From NCBI GenBank assembly GCA_021613535.1, contig CP075494.1:14384001-14448000 (forward strand): a stretch of 64,000 bases of DNA, in the 5' to 3' direction. The position numbers and the translations under genes are program-made. Of the stretch, positions 25,801 through 50,400 are shown piece after piece. The notes beneath the pieces are model-generated. The model made no database searches. It was not told the DNA's origin and worked only from the letters and a program-made list of their open reading frames with translations. The stretch is from Adineta vaga (taxonomy: Eukaryota; Animalia; Rotifera). Positions within the stretch are counted from its first letter, which is position 1. Every line of letters starts with the position of its first letter.

Positions 25801-28641
25801 AACCACAGGACAAACTATTTTTCAAAGTTATACCATTGGAAAAACAGGTCCATTAGATGGTCGTGCCTTGTATGATCCATATGTAACAAAAGATCATCTT
25901 CAATATAAACGTTTTACTGCACAATCAAATAATACAGCTTATGTCTATGATTTTCCTGAAATGTTTCGACAAGGTTTATTATTAATATGGAAACAATATG
26001 CCGAAATAAATAAATTGAAAGAAAATTCCATTCCAAAAGATATTTTTACTTCTGAAGAACTTATTCTTGATATGACTAATCCGAGTAAAATCTTTTCTCT
26101 TCATTTCATCAATCAATTCTTCTGTTTTCTTTTCGTTCAATAGTCAATCAAATTGATTCAGCATCGTTATTATCACCAGGTATGATCTCATCAAAAGCAT
26201 CAGCAGATATAAAAGATTCAATAGAATATTTGAAACAATGTGGACTTTCAATGCGTCGACGTTCGCCAGCTGAAAATGATTGTGGCATGGTTGCATGGCG
26301 TTTTCATATGAAAACACCTGAATGTCCAGCCGGTCGTTCGATTATTGTTATTGCAAATGATATTACATATAAAATTGGTTCATTTGGTATTGAAGAAGAT
26401 TTATTATTTCAACGTGCTTCGGAATTATCACGTTTAGAACGTATACCACGTATTTATTTATCAGCGAATAGTGGTGCACGTATTGGTTTAGCGGAAGAAT
26501 TAAAATCTCTTTATAATATTGCTTGGAATGATCCAAATGATATTGATAAAGGTATTCAGTATTTATATTTAACAGCAGATGATTATGCTCGTGTATCACA
26601 TTTGAACTCTGTTCGAACTGAAATCGTTCATGAAAAGGAAGAAATTCGATATAAAATTATAGATATTATTGGTAAAGAAAATAGTTTAGGCGTTGAAAAT
26701 TTACGTGGATCCGGTATGATTGCTGGTGAAACTTCATATGCATATAATGTCGTAGTAAGTGGGAATTTCATTTTTCCAAAAAACAAAGAACTAATGCTGT
26801 TTTTTCTCTAGCCAACAATTAGTCTTGTGACTTGTCGAGCAGTTGGTATCGGTGCTTATCTTGTTCGATTAGGTTCTCGTGTTATACAAGTAGAAAATTC
26901 TCATATTATTCTGACAGGAGCGGGTGCATTAAATAAAGTTCTTGGAAGAGAAGTTTATAATAGTAATAATCAATTAGGTGGTACACAAATTATGTTTAAT
27001 AATGGTATTACACATGATGTAGTTAAAGATGATTTTGAAGGATGTGTACTTATACTTCGATGGCTTTCATATATGCCAGAAACAATGTCTCACTCACCAC
27101 CAATTTTAACACAATCTTTTGATCCAATCAATCGTCCAGTTGAATTCACGCCAACATCAACACCATATGATCCACGACATATGATTCAAGGAAGACAATT
27201 GACTTCCTTACCACAAGCAACAACGAATACCAATGAAACAGGTGCAACAGCAACATCGGCATTTCAATCGGGATTTTTTGATCGTGATTCATTTATTGAA
27301 ATCATGAAAGGTTGGGCGAAAACTGTCGTTTGTGGTCGAGCTCGTCTTGGTGGCATTCGTAAGTCATTCAAACAGATATTTTCTTCGAAGAATTATGTTT
27401 GTATTTTGTAGCAATGGGTGTAATTAGTGTTGAGACTCGTACAGTTGAATTAGAACAGCCGGCTGATCCTGCTAATTTTGATTCTGATGCTCGTACAATT
27501 CAACAAGCTGGACAAGTTTGGTTTCCCGATTCGGCATTCAAAACAGCGCAAGCGATCAATGATTTCAAACGTGAAAATCTACCATTAATGATTTTTGCAA
27601 ACTGGCGAGGTTTTAGTGGTGGAATGAAAGATATGTTCGATCAAATAATTAAATTTGGTGCTTATATTGTTGATGCTTTACATGAATATGACCAACCTGT
27701 ATTCATTTATATTCCACCCTTTGGCGAATTACGTGGCGGAGCATGGGTTGTTGTTGATCCAACGATTAATTTACGTTATATGGAAATGTATGCAGATCGT
27801 TTGAGTCGTGGCAGTGTACTTGAACCGGAAGGAACAGTAGAAATTAAATATCGTAGAAAAGATTTGATAAAAACAATTCATCGACTTGATCCAATTTGCC
27901 GTGAATTAATAACAAATATAAATACAACAACAGCTAATTCGAAAGAAGATTTAGAGAGACAATTAGCTGAAAGAGAAAAGGATCTATTACCGGTTTATCA
28001 ACAAGCTGCTGTGATGTTTTGTGATTTACATGATACACCTGGAAGAATGTTAGAAAAAGGAGTTATTCAAGTAGGTCAAATGTTTTTCCAAAGTTTATTG
28101 AAAAAGGTCTTCTTCTTCTTCTTCTTTTTCTCAAGGAAATTCTTGATTGGCGAACAAGTCGTGAATTCTTCTATTGGCGTTTAAGACGACGTTTAGGCGA
28201 AGATAGTACTATTAAAACGATTCTAGTCAATGATTCATCAATTGATTATCAAAAAGCATTAAATTATCTTCAACAATGGTTTAATGAAGATAGAAAAGAT
28301 GAAGTACGACCAAATTTTCTTTCGATTTTCTTGATCTTCAATTTGTTTTTTTTCAGAAATCTCAATGGACAAATGATAAAGAAGTTGTTCAATGGCTTGT
28401 AGATTTTAATAAATCTGCTTTAATCAATGATCGAATGACAAATTTACAAAAACAAAATGCACGAGAAAAGATTCGTCGGTATGTACTAATTTCTTTCTCT
28501 TTCAAACGAATGATTTCATTTGATCTTTTAAGATTATTACAACTTCATCCTGATCTTCTATCGGATATTATGGGACATCCAAATGATGATCAACGTCAGC
28601 AAATTTATCGTCATCGTAATAGTAGAACTCTCGATCAATAA
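19822..28641 (+). CDS. ACC: Acetyl-CoA carboxylase (multidomain eukaryotic ACC), about 31 short introns
   Basis: BC domain ([62 protein letters not shown]), biotinylation motif EVMKM at 22986-23000, CT domain ([48 protein letters not shown]). Confidence 0.97.
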
Positions 28642-29185: not shown

Positions 29186-30246
29186 ATGGCTAGTGAAAGG
29201 ACTATTCCGAAACAAGTTTCATTTCAAACAGATGATGATGATGATGGTGGTTTGTATAATGAATAGATTTGATTTCTTTCTTGAAATTTTGATTTTCTTC
29301 TATTGAAGATAAACAAAGTTCGAATACTCCACCACCAAACTCGAGATTATCTGTTGAACCAGGTGAAACTCGTTATATTACAATTGTTGAAGCAATTGGT
29401 CTAGATTTTAATTCATTTATTCCTCAAGCTGATATCACGTCACAAGTACATTTTATTAGTAATATTCAACCAGATTCGAAAGCAAGCCAAGCCGGTCTTA
29501 GAGATGGAGATCGTATTTTACAAATAAATGGTATTAATGTAACCAGTCTTGAACATGAAGATGTACGGAAATTAATGCAATTAATGTCACCAATCGTTCT
29601 TACTGTTGCCAATGATACGAAATATTTATTATTACTTCAACAACCAATTGAAGATATCGAAGAAAAACAACCAGGTATGTTCAATGAGCTAAACGAAACG
29701 ATAGATTTATTCAATAAGATTTCTTTAGAACTTCCAATAACATCTCATGAAGGTATGGATGTTGATCCTAGTCAACGTCGTCCTAGTCGTTTTGAATTGC
29801 GAAAACAACCATCCTCTGGATCGATAGCATCATCAATAAATGCATCGAAATCAGCTCGTTGTGAAATCTATACTTTAACAGCAGCCGATGAATCGAGCAA
29901 AGAAGAACCATTGAAAGCAAAATTATGTCGTCTTCGTAAGAGTAAAAATTTCGATGGATATGGATTAGTATTAACATCTCAAAAACATCTTCATGTTATT
30001 GGTGAAGTTGAAGAAGCATCACCTTCATATCGAGCTGGTTTACGTGAAAATGATGTGATCCTATTTGTTGGTAAAACAAATATAGAAAAATTATCCCATG
30101 AAGATGTGAAAATTATGATACGAGCGGCAGCATTAGCATCTAGTCATGTTGAATTGACAGTTATGTCAAAAGCTGATATACCGAGATATAAAACATTGAA
30201 AGAAAAAGGTTTAATTGATTGGTCAGTTATGGGTTTAGACCAATAA
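29186..30246 (+). CDS. Two-PDZ NHERF-like scaffold protein
   Basis: PDZ1 (GLDF...ASQAGLRDGDRILQING) and PDZ2 (LCRLRKSKNFDGYGL...SPSYRAGLRENDVIL). Intron ~29250-29308 and a probable stop-free 54-bp intron at 29675-29728. Confidence 0.85.
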
Positions 30247-30964
30247 TTTCGCATCTGATCATTGTCTTTTATTATTATCTTTGTCGATTTAATTCAACGA
30301 ACATAACTTTCATCTCTTCTTGTATCGAAACGTTGATCGATGTAATTACATGTTACATTTCATAGTTTTGAATAAATGTATTGATTCTTGTGTGAATATC
30401 TACAAGTCATTCAACTTCATAAAAGTCATTGTCATCGAGGTGCGAACGTCAATATAGATATATAAACGTCATTCATTATGTAAAGTAGATCTGATAACTT
30501 TCTAATACTCATTTTCATAAAGAATAATTTGCATTTATGATTATATTATTATTGATCAGTACAGATACTGAAATCTCTCATATGACGAAAAATATTTCAA
30601 TCAGTCACATTGTTTATCTCATTCTGTTCTACATCAAATATATTGACTTAATCTAATGATTTTCGTTTGAATTTTGTGAATGAAATGATTGTGATACTAA
30701 GAATTGATAGAAAGAATGAGGATTAGACTTATCAGTTGAATTCAACAACACCTGAAAATATTTGTTTATCGTATTATTGATAACAGCGCAAAATGATTAA
30801 TCTCATATAAATATAAGAATAATAAGTACTGGATCTTTCAGTACCTCTATAGAAATGGCGTTCAATGCTAAAGTTCATGTTGATTACATGTATTCTAATC
30901 AAATGAAACCTATTCGGTACAAATGAATTTGTATTTTGATAAATCTTCAATAAATATCTTTCAG

Positions 30965-32824
30965 GAAATCTACTTGCTCAACTATTCTTTCAAGCACTGC
31001 CTTCAAAGTACTTGCTGTTTTTCTTATTTTATCAATGGTTGTTGCAACCATTGTTGTACCGATTGTTTTGTTTCAACGGTCAAATAAAAAACCGTCAACT
31101 TCATCAACAAGTAATGGTAAACTCAGATATTTCTACTCTCAATAATATTACAACAGCAATAAAATAATCTTGTTTTTAGTCACCAGTGATACTACTAGTG
31201 TTGTTACGACAACTTCATCTTCGAGTAAATGCACTTTTAAAATGAAATTTGATAAACTATGTTTCATTTATAGCTGCCACTACAAGTACAGTCAAACTAA
31301 GTATGATTAACAAAGAATTCTTTTCTATATCTGAAATAAACATGAAAATATCTTTTTGTAGCTTTAACAACATCTTCAACGAGTACGTTACTTATCTAAC
31401 AAACTAATATCTTTCTCACATTTCGAGTTAATCTCGTTATTTTCTAGCGTCTACATTAACTACAACTACTTCGAAAGGTAATGTTAAAGAAAGTATGATT
31501 GAACTTAAGAAATAGATCGTCTGTTTCATAGTACCCACAACAACAATAATAACAACAACATCGACTATAGTTTCTAGTAACACTTTCAATTTTAAGTATG
31601 ATTCAGATTGATAAAATATATTTTTTAAAATAGGCACAACAACAACAACACCTTTTATTGAAGGTGAGTATTAATAAATTTTAATAGAATCTCAATTATT
31701 TTGCTTCTAGAGAGTAATACTTCTATTACTATCGATTCAGGTATGTTCGTTATCAGTGTATATCAGTCATTATTTCAGTAATATTCTAGTTGATACCTCA
31801 GAAACATTCTCAGTTATGTGTAAGTTTTGATTCTCGGCAATAGATAATTTTTGATAGATTGCTTTAATTTAGTTGAAACGACAGCAACGGGTAAGCGTTT
31901 ATTACATATATGTTTCTTTACAAATGACACTTTTTTTCTGCATATGAAGTATACCCAGAACTAAACGATACGGGTAAGTTCATTACAAATATGATTTGTC
32001 TATAGATGAAAGACTAATCTTATCATCTAGGTACGATTATGGTCAATGCAACTACGGAACTCTATACAAATGATACAGATAATACTTTTACAGGAATGGA
32101 TTTGTCAACAACAACAAAAAGTAAGTCTGACCTATGACAGTTTCAATCTTTACGAACATGAATTTCACTTCTATTATCGTCAATTGTTGTAGCAACGACA
32201 ACCACAGTTACAACAAGTAAGATCAATGAGTTTATTTAATCTAATTCTTCTACATTATTTTTAGCGACAACAACAATGGTTCCACCGAATCTCTTAGTCA
32301 ATCCTGGCGCAGAATCTGGTAATATCGGAGGTTGGACTCAATTAGGTCCTGCAGCTGCTATTGTGGATTCTGGTGGAAGTTTCAACAAAGGTTATTATCC
32401 AAAAAGTGGGACTTATTGTTTTGCTGGTGGACGTGGATCGAACGGTGATATATCAACTTTATCACAAAATGTTCGACTCTTAGGTGGTATTCAAGGTTTT
32501 ACCGAAGCACAACTTGATTCTGGTCGTCTCAAAGCATTTGTTCAGTTTTACTATCAGACTTGGGATCATCCTCTCATGCGTCACGATGAAGTTGAAGTTA
32601 TTATAATATTTCGATCATTAACACATACAGATATACAAACAACATCGTCAGGAGGACGTGCTTGCAAAACAAATCCGGGATGGTGCGAATATCGAAATGA
32701 AATTCCATTACCAAAAGGAACACGAAGTATTGATTATCTAATGAGATTTACGCGAAAAGATATAGGCGGAAGTAGTATCGACTCTTATACTGATGACAAT
32801 TTATTAAAAGTTATACCCGTATAG
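30965..32824 (+). CDS. Type II membrane mucin-like protein: TM segment, micro-exon Thr/Ser stalk, C-terminal galactose-binding-like/FBA-like domain (5' end unresolved)
   Basis: TM exon 30965-31116 (VLAVFLILSMVVATIVVPIVLF), 12 internal phase-1 exons of 18-90 nt, terminal exon 32265-32824 (NLLVNPGAESG..GW...CFAGG...LSQNV...LPKGTRSI...DSYTDD). Confidence 0.75.
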
Positions 32825-33140
32825 TTTGACTTTTTTTTGTCAAAACAATTGTTTCTTTTTTATTATCATTTGACTTGAATAATAAATTAAACTTGTCAAA
32901 TTTACATGATTATGAAATGTATCTTCTAAACATTCGAACTAGATGTCAGTAATCATCACTTAGAGAATTTTCAAAGAAAATTTTCATTCATTAACAAGAC
33001 AAACCAATGAAATCATAGTTGATTGAAATGTGTGTGTATTCGTATAATTCATTTCATTTCTTACTCTAGTTGAAATTCAAATAGGAAATTATTAAAGAAA
33101 AAAGACTCTGAAACTTTGAATTTCTAATTAAACTAAAAGC

Positions 33141-47422: not shown

Positions 47423-50400
47423 ATGAGTATCATACAGGAATCAATCAGTAATACTGAAGCTGAACTTGTCGAAGATGATGATTATCTATCGATTGCATCA
47501 GAATCATCTTCGGCAACAAATGGAAAAACTTTGAAAAAAGTCTACGATGAATTTGAAACGAACAAAAGCGAAAGATTAGATGATGGTAAAAATAATGAAA
47601 AAGAATTCATTACACCATCGAGCTCGGATGATGATCTACAAACGACCAATGCAGAACAATACAATTTCCAATCACAAGCAAATGACTCATCTGCTTCTAG
47701 AACATTATACATTTCAAATGAACTTGAATTGCAAGAATCTAACTCAAATACAGAAGAAAACCATCCTATATCTTCTGAATATGATCAATCGATTGAGAAT
47801 GTACCTCATTCACGTTCAAGTATTAAACAACGAATTAAAAATCAGTCTACACCAAAATCATCCGTAGACATTTTACACGGTGAGGCGTACAGCTCGAATA
47901 TATTTATATAATCAATCAATGAATCACCTAACAAATAACTGCTTAATTCATCTTGTATTGCTCGACATAATCTCTTCTATGATATCTTTTTAGGTACAAC
48001 ACCGATTTCACAATTACCTGATCATGGTTATGAATTGCATCATATAAAATTAATTCAACCAACTGAAACAGTTCCACTTGGTTTTAAATTAAGTAAACAA
48101 ACCGATTCTTTACAATGTGTTATATCAGGTATTGATCAACAATCGCAAGCTGATCTTGCTGGTGTTCAAGTTGATGATTGGTTAATTGGAATTGAAGATA
48201 AAGATATACGTTCAACAGAATTTTCCGATGTTTCACAATATATTCATCAGAAATTAAATAGTAATGGTTCAATTCATATACTTATCGCACGAAAGAAATC
48301 TCTAGCACCGTCATCAGTGACTACAGACGATCAACGACTATCTAGTATAACAACGTATGATAGACCAAAGGAAACAGATATTCTCTTATCTGTTGGTTTA
48401 TCCAACAAAATCGAAGAGAAACTTGTCAATCAACATGAAAATGAGACATTTAATACATCCGATGAAACAGTTCGTCATATAATTCTAAAAGATGCATTAG
48501 GATTAGATTTTCATTCGTTTGCACCTGATGAAAATAGTCTTTTTAAAATTCATGCTATCAGTAATGTTCGACCATTATCATTAGCTGATCGAGCTGGTTT
48601 ACGTAATGGTGATCGAATATTAACTGTTAATGGTATTGATGTTACAAATACCAATCATAAAACTGTTCGACATCGTCTATTAAAGAAATCGCCTGTACAT
48701 CTAACAGTGGTGAATGATCCAAATTATTTTGAACTGATTGAAACGGTTAAAAATAAGCAAAATCGAATATCATTATCGAGACAAACATCAACATGTGAAG
48801 CAATTGAAGAAAAATCACCTAGTCTTATTTCCGAAGATTTAATTAATGTTCTCTTTATTGATGATCAAGGTCCAGTTTACTTTAAACATTGTGTCGTAGA
48901 AAAAGAAGCAACTCAACAAACATTAGGTTTTGCTTTACATCACGTCGATAATCTTCATATTATAAGTGATGCCGATAAGCACATGTCTGCTTACAAATGT
49001 GGTGTACGTAATGATGATGTTATACTTTATATAAATAAAGAAAATGTTGAACAAATGACTCATGATGATGTTAAAATTCTTATTCGAATGTTTACTATTT
49101 CCAATGAAATATTTCATTTAATATTATTACAGAAAAATGATGTCAAACGATATAGAGATTATCAAGAAAAGAGTTTTATTGATTGGACAAATATTCTTGG
49201 TGATATATATGAAGACAATCTTGAACAACAACGTCCATACGCAAATATTCAAACAAATCCATTATCGACATCGTCTTCTCTTCCATCTGGTACTCGTATT
49301 TGTATCTTAAAACCATCGATCGGTCAACCAGCGGGTTTTTCAATTAGTGGTGAAGATAAACCACCATTTATCATTTCAAGAATGGATAAAGATTCTCCTG
49401 CTGAACGTGCTGGTTTACAAATCAATGATATTTTATTATCGATCAATGGTAAATCACTTATTCAAGTATCTTACGATGATACAATTCAAATAATAAAAGA
49501 AGCACTCCAACAACCTATCATTCAAATTCTTGTTAGTCAATCGGTACGATCAAAAACTCCTGAAAGTAGTCATTCATCAAGTGAAGAAAGTGAAGACGTA
49601 AGTCCGCCTAGTGCGGACAGTAAAGCAGGACAAGTCCATTATCGTAATACCAATCCTTTGCAAATATATCAAAGTATGTTAATCTTCTGAGACATAAAAA
49701 TATCTTTCGTTTAAAATGAACTTTTTCTTTATATTTATCTTTTCTCTTATTATTTTATTCTATTGTATTAAGATGAGTGAATCTCTTCTTTTGTTTAAAT
49801 ATTCTAAATTGTTCTTTCAATCTGTCATTATTTCACTGAATGAGTCGAGGATTAGTCAACAACATATCTATTGTATACATTTCTTTCACAAGTTAGAAGA
49901 AAAAAAAAGTAACAACTTCATTTCAGCTTTTATATCTAGTAAAGAAAGACTATGGTCTATATTCGAGGCGAGTTTTAGTCTATTGATTATTTTCTTTCAA
50001 CTTTTCTTTATTCTTTTAGCACAACGAATTCGGGAATTGGCATATACATTACGTCTTTGTCATTTAAATGCAACAAATTTGGATGGTACACCTGCATCAA
50101 CATTTGGTTTCGATATAACGAAAGAATCTAAATATGAATATCCAGTTATATCACGTATTGAAGCTCGATCATCAGGTGAACGTAGTGGTTTACAATCACG
50201 TGATTTATTATTAAAAGTCAATGGTCGTAAAACAAAAGGTGTAGATATTGATAAAGTTAGACGAATCATAGAGAAAGCTAAAAGTGACAATAGATTAGAA
50301 GTGCTTGTTGTTGACGAAGAAGTTTATCGATATTGTACGTCAACGCATCGAAAATTCAAAGAACCTTATATTAAAGTGAAACATATCTTTCCCAAAAATC

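What the first reader, a model, noticed from the sequence alone, without database searches (positions are those of the whole stretch)
31180..32216. Micro-exon gene: 12 symmetric phase-1 exons build a length-adjustable mucin stalk
Seen: AG/GT-bounded exons 31180-31224 (45 nt), 31274-31300 (27), 31362-31382 (21), 31448-31477 (30), 31532-31576 (45), 31634-31663 (30), 31711-31740 (30), 31790-31819 (30), 31873-31890 (18), 31950-31973 (24), 32031-32120 (90) and 32193-32216 (24). Each is a multiple of 3 and phase 1-1, and mostly encodes Thr/Ser. The ORF track misses them entirely. Established: schistosome MEG genes use this design to diversify proteins by exon skipping. Inference: combinatorial skipping could tune the height and glycosylation of a surface lectin-like receptor.
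Basis: partly seen in the sequence, partly recalled or inferred. Interest (0 to 1): 0.8.

Follow-up and report, generated by a model that had tools for sequence, protein, structure and literature searches.

The report
Rotifer lectin receptor on micro-exon stalk
This is a real, already annotated gene of the rotifer Adineta vaga. It encodes a membrane protein whose sugar-binding-type head, probably of bacterial origin, sits on a Thr/Ser-rich stalk built from 12 tiny same-phase exons, but nothing shows that the exons are skipped to adjust the stalk's length.

Summary
All 12 exons have AG/GT bounds, lengths divisible by 3 and phase 1-1. The public 395-aa protein I4U23_026572 of Adineta vaga maps onto the window with those same 12 coordinates, plus exon 1 (30855-30916), a transmembrane exon (30965-31116) and the terminal exon (32265-32824).

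The product reads as a type II membrane protein with three parts:
- a short N-terminal tail and one membrane-spanning helix;
- a 139-residue stalk that is 55% Ser/Thr;
- a 180-residue beta-sandwich head that folds like the Fbs1/FBA sugar-binding domain and CBMs.

Outside bdelloid rotifers, the head's sequence relatives are bacterial surface proteins (PEP-CTERM anchors, Verrucomicrobiota). This suggests an old gene transfer.

The design is family-wide. The ohnologue on chromosome 2 has about 41 micro-exons, including 12 tandem 168-nt two-exon units. A. steineri has 13 micro-exons and Rotaria magnacalcarata has 5.

Stalk length therefore clearly changes at the DNA level. Regulated exon skipping is untested. 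The 47-72-nt introns argue against it, only one A. vaga product is on record, and differences between public models look like predictor noise.

The scan noted the same design before in this genome, in an NHL-EGF receptor and in the chromosome 2 ohnologue.

The parts
30855..30916 (+). Exon 1: start codon and cytoplasmic N-terminal tail (62 nt, ends in phase 2)
   Evidence: Exact mapping of public protein P0190. The same 62-nt first exon is present in the A. steineri orthologue.
30965..31116 (+). Exon 2: single transmembrane helix (AFKVLAVFLILSMVVATIVVPIVLF, signal anchor) and start of the Ser/Thr stretch; ends in phase 1
   Evidence: The orthologous 155-nt exon in A. steineri is. The hydrophobic span was read directly from the translation.
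31180..31224 (+). Micro-exon 1 (45 nt, phase 1-1), TSDTTSVVTTTSSS
31274..31300 (+). Micro-exon 2 (27 nt, phase 1-1), ATTSTVKL
   Evidence: A 27-nt counterpart exists in A. steineri.
31362..31382 (+). Micro-exon 3 (21 nt, phase 1-1), LTTSST
   Evidence: A 21-nt counterpart exists in A. steineri.
31448..31477 (+). Micro-exon 4 (30 nt, phase 1-1), STLTTTTSK
31532..31576 (+). Micro-exon 5 (45 nt, phase 1-1), PTTTIITTTSTIVS
31634..31663 (+). Micro-exon 6 (30 nt, phase 1-1), TTTTTPFIE
31711..31740 (+). Micro-exon 7 (30 nt, phase 1-1), SNTSITIDS, with an N-glycosylation sequon
31790..31819 (+). Micro-exon 8 (30 nt, phase 1-1), DTSETFSVM
31873..31890 (+). Micro-exon 9 (18 nt, phase 1-1), ETTAT. It matches the 18-nt exon ETITT of A. 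steineri.
31950..31973 (+). Micro-exon 10 (24 nt, phase 1-1), YPELNDT. It has the weakest acceptor (..ATGAAG).
   Evidence: The chain search preferred an alternative acceptor at 31959.
32031..32120 (+). Exon 11 of the stalk (90 nt, phase 1-1), with three N-x-S/T sequons. It is homologous to the 84-nt exon of A. steineri.
32193..32216 (+). Micro-exon 12 (24 nt, phase 1-1), TTTTVTT
32265..32824 (+). Terminal exon (starts in phase 1, stop TAG at 32822-32824). It holds the whole ~180-residue beta-sandwich lectin-like head with no intron.
   Evidence: AlphaFold model pLDDT 85.7. Fold matches to Fbs1/FBA sugar-binding domains and CBM61/16/22. 580 sequence relatives.
32881..32886 (+). AATAAA, candidate polyadenylation signal 57 nt after the stop (inferred only)
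   Evidence: Read from the sequence; not tested

Best explanation
The stretch is the middle of the A. vaga gene I4U23_026572. The gene encodes a 395-residue single-pass type II membrane glycoprotein with three parts:
- a short cytoplasmic N-terminus and one signal-anchor helix;
- a 139-residue Ser/Thr-rich (55%) stalk with five N-x-S/T sequons, presumably O- and N-glycosylated;
- a C-terminal beta-sandwich head of the galactose-binding-domain-like type (nearest fold: the Fbs1/FBA sugar-binding domain), which most likely binds a carbohydrate at the cell surface.

The stalk is encoded by 12 phase 1-1 micro-exons separated by 47-72-nt introns. I expect these to be spliced constitutively, one after another, by intron definition.

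The uniform phase and small size are best read as the footprint of how the stalk grew: by repeated duplication, and later divergence, of small exon-plus-intron units inserted between two phase-1 boundaries. Stalk length is therefore adjustable over evolutionary time at the DNA level, not (as far as shown) per transcript.

The head domain was probably acquired by an ancestral bdelloid from bacteria, where relatives are surface-anchored proteins. It was then joined, as one intact phase-1 exon, to an animal-type anchor and stalk.

Shown: the gene structure, its conservation, the fold and the taxonomic distribution of relatives. Inferred: topology, glycosylation, sugar binding, constitutive splicing and the direction of transfer.
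For: Gene model: exact match of the public protein to 15 exons. All introns are disruptive if retained.

Conservation of the design:
- The A. steineri orthologue has 62- and 155-nt first exons, 13 phase 1-1 micro-exons and a 551-nt last exon.
- An R. magnacalcarata relative has 5 micro-exons.
- A sludge-metagenome rotifer keeps the synteny ACC-PDZ-gene-Med14.

DNA-level length change:
- The ohnologue at C2:2.893-2.897 Mb, with a PDZ paralogue 5 kb away, has about 41 micro-exons.
- These include 12 tandem ~168-nt two-exon units and ~505-nt higher-order repeats that are 86-92% identical.
- Exons are more conserved than introns among the units, 0.73 versus 0.52 pairwise identity.

Head domain:
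- The model has pLDDT 85.7.
- Foldseek hits Fbs1/Fbs2/FBG3 sugar-binding domains at E 1e-10 to 1e-8 and TM 0.71-0.78, then CBM61, CBM16 and CBM22.

Bacterial ancestry:
- The profile search gave 580 relatives.
- Named non-rotifer relatives are Verrucomicrobiota.
- 13 of 94 non-rotifer relatives carry PEP-CTERM; others carry Big_3_5, a T9SS tail or RTX repeats.
- The rotifer rows form one clade (support 98) inside that diversity on a midpoint-rooted tree.
- The Atlas search puts a rotifer cluster nearest, then Verrucomicrobiota clusters, then chordate FBA.

Against skipping: all introns are 47-72 nt, whereas exon skipping goes with longer flanking introns (PMC6142364).
Against: - No RNA evidence for this gene was reachable, so constitutive splicing is an expectation, not an observation.
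- Symmetric exons would allow in-frame skipping.
- Public models on identical DNA differ by one micro-exon in R. magnacalcarata and by three in A. steineri. Real alternative splicing could in principle have fed into these models.
- In the window copy the exons have diverged so far that no tandem units are detectable, so origin by duplication is inferred from the ohnologue.
- The stalk is poor in proline (3 of 139 residues), unlike classical PTS mucin domains.
- Basic residues flank the helix on both sides, so the type II topology rests mainly on the nature of the C-terminal domain and on the clearer KQRR-before-helix pattern in the ohnologue.
- The tree is unrooted (midpoint only) and most bacterial-type rows are unnamed metagenome proteins.
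- Pfam finds no family for the head.
Confidence: 0.75

Rival explanations
1. One reading: the 12 symmetric micro-exons are cassette exons. Regulated, combinatorial skipping gives a ladder of receptor isoforms that differ in stalk height and glycan load, as in schistosome micro-exon genes.
For: - All 12 exons are phase 1-1 and multiples of 3, so any subset keeps the frame.
- Some acceptors are weak (31634, 31950).
- Public models on identical DNA include or omit a 27-nt micro-exon in R. magnacalcarata and three micro-exons in A. steineri.
- MEGs show that such a design can serve splicing-based variation (PMC4350168).
Against: - There is no isoform or transcript-derived variant of the A. vaga protein in a 5.8-billion-protein collection. 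P0190's 90% identity cluster has one member.
- Flanking introns of 47-72 nt favour intron definition, which is not the skipping-prone architecture (PMC6142364).
- The A. steineri model that includes the extra exons also removes 45 nt from the most conserved part of the domain, so model differences look like predictor noise.
- Symmetry is expected anyway from growth by duplication between two phase-1 introns.
- Earlier notes of this scan on similar arrays in the same genome report consecutive joining in RNA (s1-482626, s1-505268, s1-484584). I did not check these.
Confidence: 0.12
2. The micro-exon structure arose by insertion of many introns into a once continuous Thr/Ser-coding stretch of an intronless, transferred gene, rather than by exon duplication. 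The uniform phase would reflect a repeated proto-splice site in Ser/Thr codons (A|GT-A).
For: - A sister bdelloid subfamily (P0199, P0115; L024 is a bdelloid contig) carries anchor or N-terminal part, Thr-rich stalk and head in one uninterrupted ORF.
- Many exons end ...A|GTA, which would read as Ser(AGT)-Thr(ACN) if unspliced.
Against: - The ohnologue shows exon-plus-intron units duplicated as blocks, with 168-nt and ~505-nt periodicity. This is direct evidence for the duplication route.
- Introns are T-rich and A/T-biased, unlike the coding stretches.
- The polarity of change between the subfamilies is unknown.
Confidence: 0.1
3. The locus is a decaying or non-functional gene, and the exon chain is an annotation artefact.
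For: No transcript evidence was obtained here. The protein is annotated only as hypothetical.
Against: - The 395-codon frame is intact across 15 exons with canonical sites.
- The head is 41-74% identical to relatives in several bdelloid genera, with 32 invariant positions.
- Synteny and exon layout are conserved in A. steineri and in a metagenome rotifer.
- Simulated sequence gives no such chains.
Confidence: 0.03

Closest known systems
[quoted passage not shown] 2010, as summarised in PMC4350168)
   Same: Runs of very small symmetric exons whose lengths are multiples of 3, flanked by ordinary first and last exons. The products are exposed to the outside of the cell.
   Different: - In MEGs most of the coding region is micro-exons. 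Here the share is 414 of 1188 coding nt (35%).
- MEG products have signal peptides and are small secreted proteins. This one is an anchored type II protein with a large folded head.
- MEG variation by splicing is documented; here it is untested.
- MEGs are reported as restricted to platyhelminths. There is no sequence relationship.
SmPoMuc polymorphic mucins of Schistosoma mansoni (PMC2576457)
   Same: The mucin repeat is encoded one repeat per tiny exon (27 bp), and the exon plus its introns is multiplied in tandem. This is the same logic as the 12 tandem two-exon units of the chromosome 2 ohnologue. Stalk or repeat number varies between gene copies.
   Different: - SmPoMuc units are about 1 kb with microsatellite spacers, and trans-splicing and recombination are invoked. 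Here the units are about 168 nt with ~50-nt introns.
- The window copy has diverged beyond recognisable tandem units.
- The conserved domain is different, and the two are not homologous.
Fbs1/FBXO2 sugar-binding (FBA) domain and bacterial CBMs (CBM61, CBM16, CBM22)
   Same: The head has the same beta-sandwich fold (TM 0.71-0.78 to Fbs1/Fbs2/FBG3). The N-terminal NLLxNPGxE..GW and C-terminal IDxYxDDxxL motifs are typical of this superfold.
   Different: - There is no Pfam FBA or CBM_4_9 match even at E 1, and only 12-18% identity to the solved structures.
- There is no F-box.
- The domain is extracellular and membrane-anchored rather than cytosolic.
- Its closest sequence relatives are an unnamed bacterial family.
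Type II transmembrane lectin receptors with a stalk or neck (e.g. CD23, DC-SIGN) and alternatively spliced mucin-like stalk exons of CD44/CD45 (from general knowledge, not checked here)
   Same: Architecture: N-terminus inside, one helix, an extended spacer and a C-terminal carbohydrate-recognition head. In CD44/CD45, in-frame Ser/Thr-rich exons change the glycosylated stalk.
   Different: The head fold is not C-type lectin. The stalk is not a coiled coil. No splicing variation has been shown.

Membership tests
Schistosome micro-exon genes (MEG) | Most of the coding region is made of very small symmetric exons | tested here: not met
   The exons are symmetric, but they make up 414 of 1188 coding nt (35%). 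In the chromosome 2 ohnologue the share is about 1293 nt, roughly 60%.
Schistosome micro-exon genes (MEG) | N-terminal signal peptide; small secreted product | tested here: not met
   By inspection of P0190, the hydrophobic helix starts near residue 33 after a charged tail, and the product is 395 aa with a folded 180-aa head. No signal-peptide predictor was available.
Schistosome micro-exon genes (MEG) | Pools of variants produced by alternative splicing of the micro-exons | not testable with these tools
   No RNA data were reachable. Only one product is on record.
Schistosome micro-exon genes (MEG) | Sequence membership in one of the platyhelminth MEG families | tested here: not met
   The named relatives found are bdelloid rotifers or bacteria (mostly Verrucomicrobiota); most of the other relatives are unnamed.
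SmPoMuc-type repeat-per-exon mucin arrays | Exon plus flanking intron multiplied as a tandem genomic unit | tested here: inconclusive
   Not detectable in the window copy. Clearly present in the ohnologue: 12 units of ~168 nt and higher-order ~505-nt repeats.
FBA / Fbs1 sugar-binding domain (PF04300) | Match to the family profile | tested here: not met
   No Pfam family at E up to 1. The profile against PDB sequences gave nothing significant.
FBA / Fbs1 sugar-binding domain (PF04300) | Beta-sandwich fold of the sugar-binding domain | tested here: met
   Foldseek hits to 1umh, 2rj2, 2e31 and 8zuh at E 1e-10 to 1e-8, TM 0.71-0.78. Model pLDDT 85.7.
Unnamed bacterial surface-protein domain (NLLxNPGAE..GW ... 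DxFxDDNSL) | Significant sequence homology over the whole domain | tested here: met
   E 1e-28 to 1e-30 and 33-44% identity to bacterial-type proteins. These carry PEP-CTERM, Big_3_5, T9SS and RTX modules.
Mucin-domain (PTS) glycoproteins | Long Ser/Thr-rich, Pro-containing, O-glycosylated region | tested here: inconclusive
   Ser+Thr is 55% over 139 residues, but there are only 3 Pro. O-glycosylation cannot be tested with these tools.
Type II membrane lectin receptors | N-in single helix, spacer, C-terminal carbohydrate-recognition domain | tested here: inconclusive
   The order of parts fits. The rotifer copies have conserved Cys pairs and N-x-S/T sequons, which suggests an extracellular head. 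Topology and sugar binding are not measured, and the fold is not C-type lectin.

The most novel reading that the evidence does not exclude
The micro-exons are true cassettes. A free-living animal would then use in-frame skipping of 18-45-nt exons, despite ~50-nt introns, to set the height and glycan load of a surface lectin whose head was taken from bacteria. That would be a MEG-like variation system outside flatworms, on a horizontally acquired recognition domain.
Probability: 0.1. Interest if true: 0.7.

Novelty: new variant of a known kind. Interest (0 to 1): 0.38.

Why it matters
The finding shows that a mucin-type spacer built one tiny exon at a time is not peculiar to parasitic flatworms. 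It recurs in a bdelloid rotifer family, where copies differ from about 5 to about 41 micro-exons.

It is also a tidy example of how a bacterial surface-binding domain can be turned into an animal membrane receptor. The foreign domain stays as one intact exon and is mounted on a host-made anchor and stalk.

Practically, it shows that public gene models of bdelloids are unreliable at micro-exons. Models on identical DNA differ by one to three exons, which affects any protein-level comparison in these genomes.

It does not, as it stands, reveal a new splicing-based diversity system.

Tried and rejected
- Pfam on the head domain: no family. A profile against PDB sequences gave only noise, apart from a faint CBM61 match.
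- Tandem Repeats Finder and repeat search on the window's stalk: no exon-intron units, only short Thr-codon runs.
- DNA search of the genome with the ohnologue's repeat unit: no array elsewhere shares it.
- Exact look-up of P0190 for transcript contigs: nothing on record. I therefore could not test splicing.
- Exon versus intron divergence between A. steineri assemblies was uninformative. L016 and L023 are 98-99% identical (p = 0.38). L016 and L018 are non-homologous upstream of L016:3100.
- I first took the differences between public models (P0029/P0164, P0160/P0189/P0010) as possible hints of skipping. I rejected them as evidence after finding identical DNA and an obviously wrong 45-nt 'intron' inside the conserved domain in one model.
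- Literature search for micro-exon genes in rotifers found nothing relevant.
- A third word-based protein search was not spent, because the first two already showed that no A. vaga variant is on record.
Searches used the terminal exon by reference and public proteins. Exon bases were pooled once, only to count base composition.
Full report
**What the window is.** The window is AT-rich (about 30% GC) and is G000:C5:14384001-14448000 of a 100.8-Mb genome in six pieces. A public protein named 'hypothetical protein I4U23_026572 [Adineta vaga]' (P0190, 395 aa) maps onto it without a single mismatch.

**The observation.**
Each has an AG acceptor and a GT donor, a length divisible by 3, and only one open frame, the one that begins with two bases completing a split codon (phase 1-1). 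The peptides are rich in Thr and Ser.
- A chain search that knew only the donor of the transmembrane exon and the acceptor of the last exon recovered the same 12 exons, with alternative bounds for three.
- The gene is already in the public annotation. That annotation came from a pipeline that used RNA-seq (PASA, Augustus, EVM; bioRxiv 10.1101/2020.06.16.155473). Whether RNA supports this particular model is not known.
- Under strict criteria this is the only chain of at least 3 Ser/Thr-rich symmetric micro-exons on either strand of the window. Twenty simulated windows gave none.
- All 14 introns are 47-72 nt, and each would introduce a stop or a frameshift if retained.

**The protein.** Exon 1 encodes a 20-residue start. 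Exon 2 encodes a 25-residue hydrophobic helix followed by QRSNKK and the first Ser/Thr run. There is no N-terminal signal peptide by eye.
- The 12 micro-exons, together with the Ser/Thr-rich residues at the end of exon 2 and the start of the last exon, make a 139-residue stretch. It has 57 Thr, 19 Ser and 3 Pro, and there are five N-x-S/T sequons.
- The last exon holds the whole head. Pfam finds nothing there.
- An AlphaFold model built on 11 homologues is confident (pLDDT 85.7, pTM 0.85). Its best structural matches are the sugar-binding domains of Fbs1, Fbs2 and FBG3 (E 1e-10 to 1e-8, TM 0.71-0.78). Bacterial carbohydrate-binding modules CBM61, CBM16 and CBM22, phage tailspike domains and MAM domains follow.
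- The motifs NLLxNPGAE..GW at the start and IDSYxDDNSL at the end are conserved in all homologues. The rotifer copies share three cysteines.
- I read this as a type II surface protein: tail inside, glycosylated stalk, lectin-like head outside. Topology, glycosylation and sugar binding are inferences.

**The family and its stalks.** The genome holds one paralogue of the head, at C2:2896804-2897331 (52% identity). A paralogue of the neighbouring PDZ gene lies 5 kb from it, so this is the ohnologous copy.
- Upstream of that head lie an anchor exon (KQRR-AIWITLTASIVTIVLGVAVGVPVA) and about 41 phase 1-1 micro-exons (one or two bounds near L003:3141-3257 are uncertain).
- Twelve of the exon pairs are tandem copies of a ~168-nt unit (39-nt exon, intron, 30-nt exon, intron). 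Higher-order ~505-nt repeats are 86-92% identical.
- Among the units, exon positions are 73% identical and intron positions 52%. The repeat is found nowhere else in the genome.
- In A. steineri the orthologue has the same 62-nt and a 155-nt first exon and 13 phase 1-1 micro-exons, some clearly matching A. vaga exons (27, 21, 18, 84/90 nt).
- An R. magnacalcarata relative has five micro-exons, and a Rotaria sp. model splices 21- and 30-nt ones.
- A rotifer contig from a bioreactor metagenome keeps the gene order ACC-PDZ-this gene-Med14. There the stalk exons appear fewer and longer, a reading of the DNA without any public model.
- A further bdelloid subfamily has the Thr-rich stalk and the head in one uninterrupted ORF (P0115, P0199). 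Its contig L024 carries an Argonaute that is 71-92% identical to A. vaga's.
- Stalk length and exon number therefore vary widely between gene copies. In the ohnologue the mechanism, block duplication of exon-intron units, is directly visible. In the window copy no such units remain detectable.

**Origin of the head.** A profile search of 1.84 billion representatives gave 580 relatives.
- The best 30 or so are rotifer proteins or look like them. The next, at E 1e-28 to 1e-30 and 33-44% identity, are mostly unnamed metagenome proteins.
- Where these are named they are Verrucomicrobiota.
- Of 94 scanned, 13 end in a PEP-CTERM sorting signal. Others carry bacterial Ig-like domains, a type IX secretion tail, RTX repeats, NHL or FG-GAP propellers.
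- On a FastTree of 176 domain copies, all named rotifer rows but one fall in one clade of 36 (support 98). That clade lies inside the bacterial-type diversity.
- The Atlas look-up ranks a rotifer cluster first, then two Verrucomicrobiota clusters, then chordate FBA.
- I take this as good but not conclusive evidence for an old bacterium-to-bdelloid transfer of the head. The tree is rooted only at the midpoint, and most rows are unnamed.

**Is the stalk adjusted by exon skipping?** I could not reach any RNA data for this gene. The exact-sequence look-up found no record, and two word-based searches covering 100-679 residues returned a single A. vaga product whose 90% cluster has one member.
- Public models of relatives do differ by whole micro-exons. 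P0029 and P0164 differ by a 27-nt exon on DNA that is identical across the gene. P0160 omits three intact micro-exons that P0189 includes on collinear, 98.7% identical DNA. P0010 omits a 30-nt exon that its DNA has.
- However, P0189 also cuts 45 nt out of the most conserved strand of the head, and P0010 starts inside an intron. These differences show that predictors stumble on micro-exons, not that the animal skips them.
- The architecture argues the other way. Exon skipping is associated with short exons flanked by longer introns (PMC6142364). The schistosome SmPoMuc mucin genes, whose 27-bp repeat exon varies in number between transcripts, have introns averaging about 550 bp (PMC2576457). 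Here every intron is 47-72 nt.
- Uniform phase is in any case the expected by-product of duplicating an exon between two phase-1 introns.
- Earlier notes of this scan on other micro-exon arrays of this genome report consecutive joining in RNA. I did not verify them and do not count them as evidence.

**Comparison with what is known.** The gene is not a MEG.
- Micro-exons make up 35% of its coding length, it has an anchor rather than a signal peptide, it has no sequence relationship to MEGs, and splicing variation is not shown (PMC4350168).
- Its nearest analogue in design is SmPoMuc, where a 27-bp mucin-repeat exon and its introns are multiplied in tandem (PMC2576457). The analogy holds strictly for the ohnologue only.
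- In architecture it resembles type II lectin receptors with a spacer, but with an FBA/CBM-type head.
- I found no paper describing micro-exon stalks in rotifers.

**Rule compliance.** Searches used the terminal exon by reference and proteins returned by the tools. The public protein was walked along the DNA to find its exons. Exon bases were pooled once, only to count base composition.

**Verdict.** The functional part, combinatorial skipping, is unsupported and on architecture unlikely. What is worth keeping:
- a bdelloid-specific receptor family in which a probably bacterial binding domain sits on a stalk that grows and shrinks by whole exon-intron units;
- the warning that public bdelloid gene models are inconsistent at micro-exons.

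Noticed in passing
L003 (G000:C2:2892800-2898300), about L003:390-3935: The ohnologue of this gene has about 41 phase 1-1 micro-exons. These include 12 tandem ~168-nt two-exon units with ~505-nt higher-order repeats that are 86-92% identical. Exons are more conserved than introns among the units.
   Followed up: yes
L016/L017 3666-3875 versus L023 1666-1875 (Adineta steineri): Public model CAF0754480.1 (P0160) omits three intact micro-exons (39, 36, 18 nt) that the model on a near-identical contig (P0189) includes. P0189 in turn removes a spurious 45-nt 'intron' (L023:2523-2567) from the conserved head domain.
   Followed up: yes
L019 and L020, 1158-1184 (Rotaria magnacalcarata): Two public models of the same gene, on DNA identical across the gene, differ by one 27-nt phase-1 micro-exon with a weak donor (GTAGGA).
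   Followed up: partly
L018 upstream of about 2190 (equivalent to L016:3100): In one A. steineri assembly the 5' half of the gene is replaced by unrelated sequence. This could be an assembly break or a structural variant. The public model there starts at an ATG inside an intron.
   Followed up: no
L024:6001-6858 and proteins P0199, P0063: A further bdelloid subfamily of the same head domain has its Thr-rich stalk, and in P0199 the membrane helix too, in one uninterrupted ORF with the head, with no micro-exons.
   Followed up: partly
window 27399-28184, 29575-30246, 33141 onward; L010: The neighbours are the C-terminal part of acetyl-CoA carboxylase, a PDZ-domain gene and a Med14-like gene. The order ACC-PDZ-lectin gene-Med14 is kept in a rotifer contig from a bioreactor metagenome.
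   Followed up: partly
window about 48866-49189 (+): A second, more distant PDZ-domain match (33% identity to the PDZ gene at 29575-30243) lies inside the same window.
   Followed up: no
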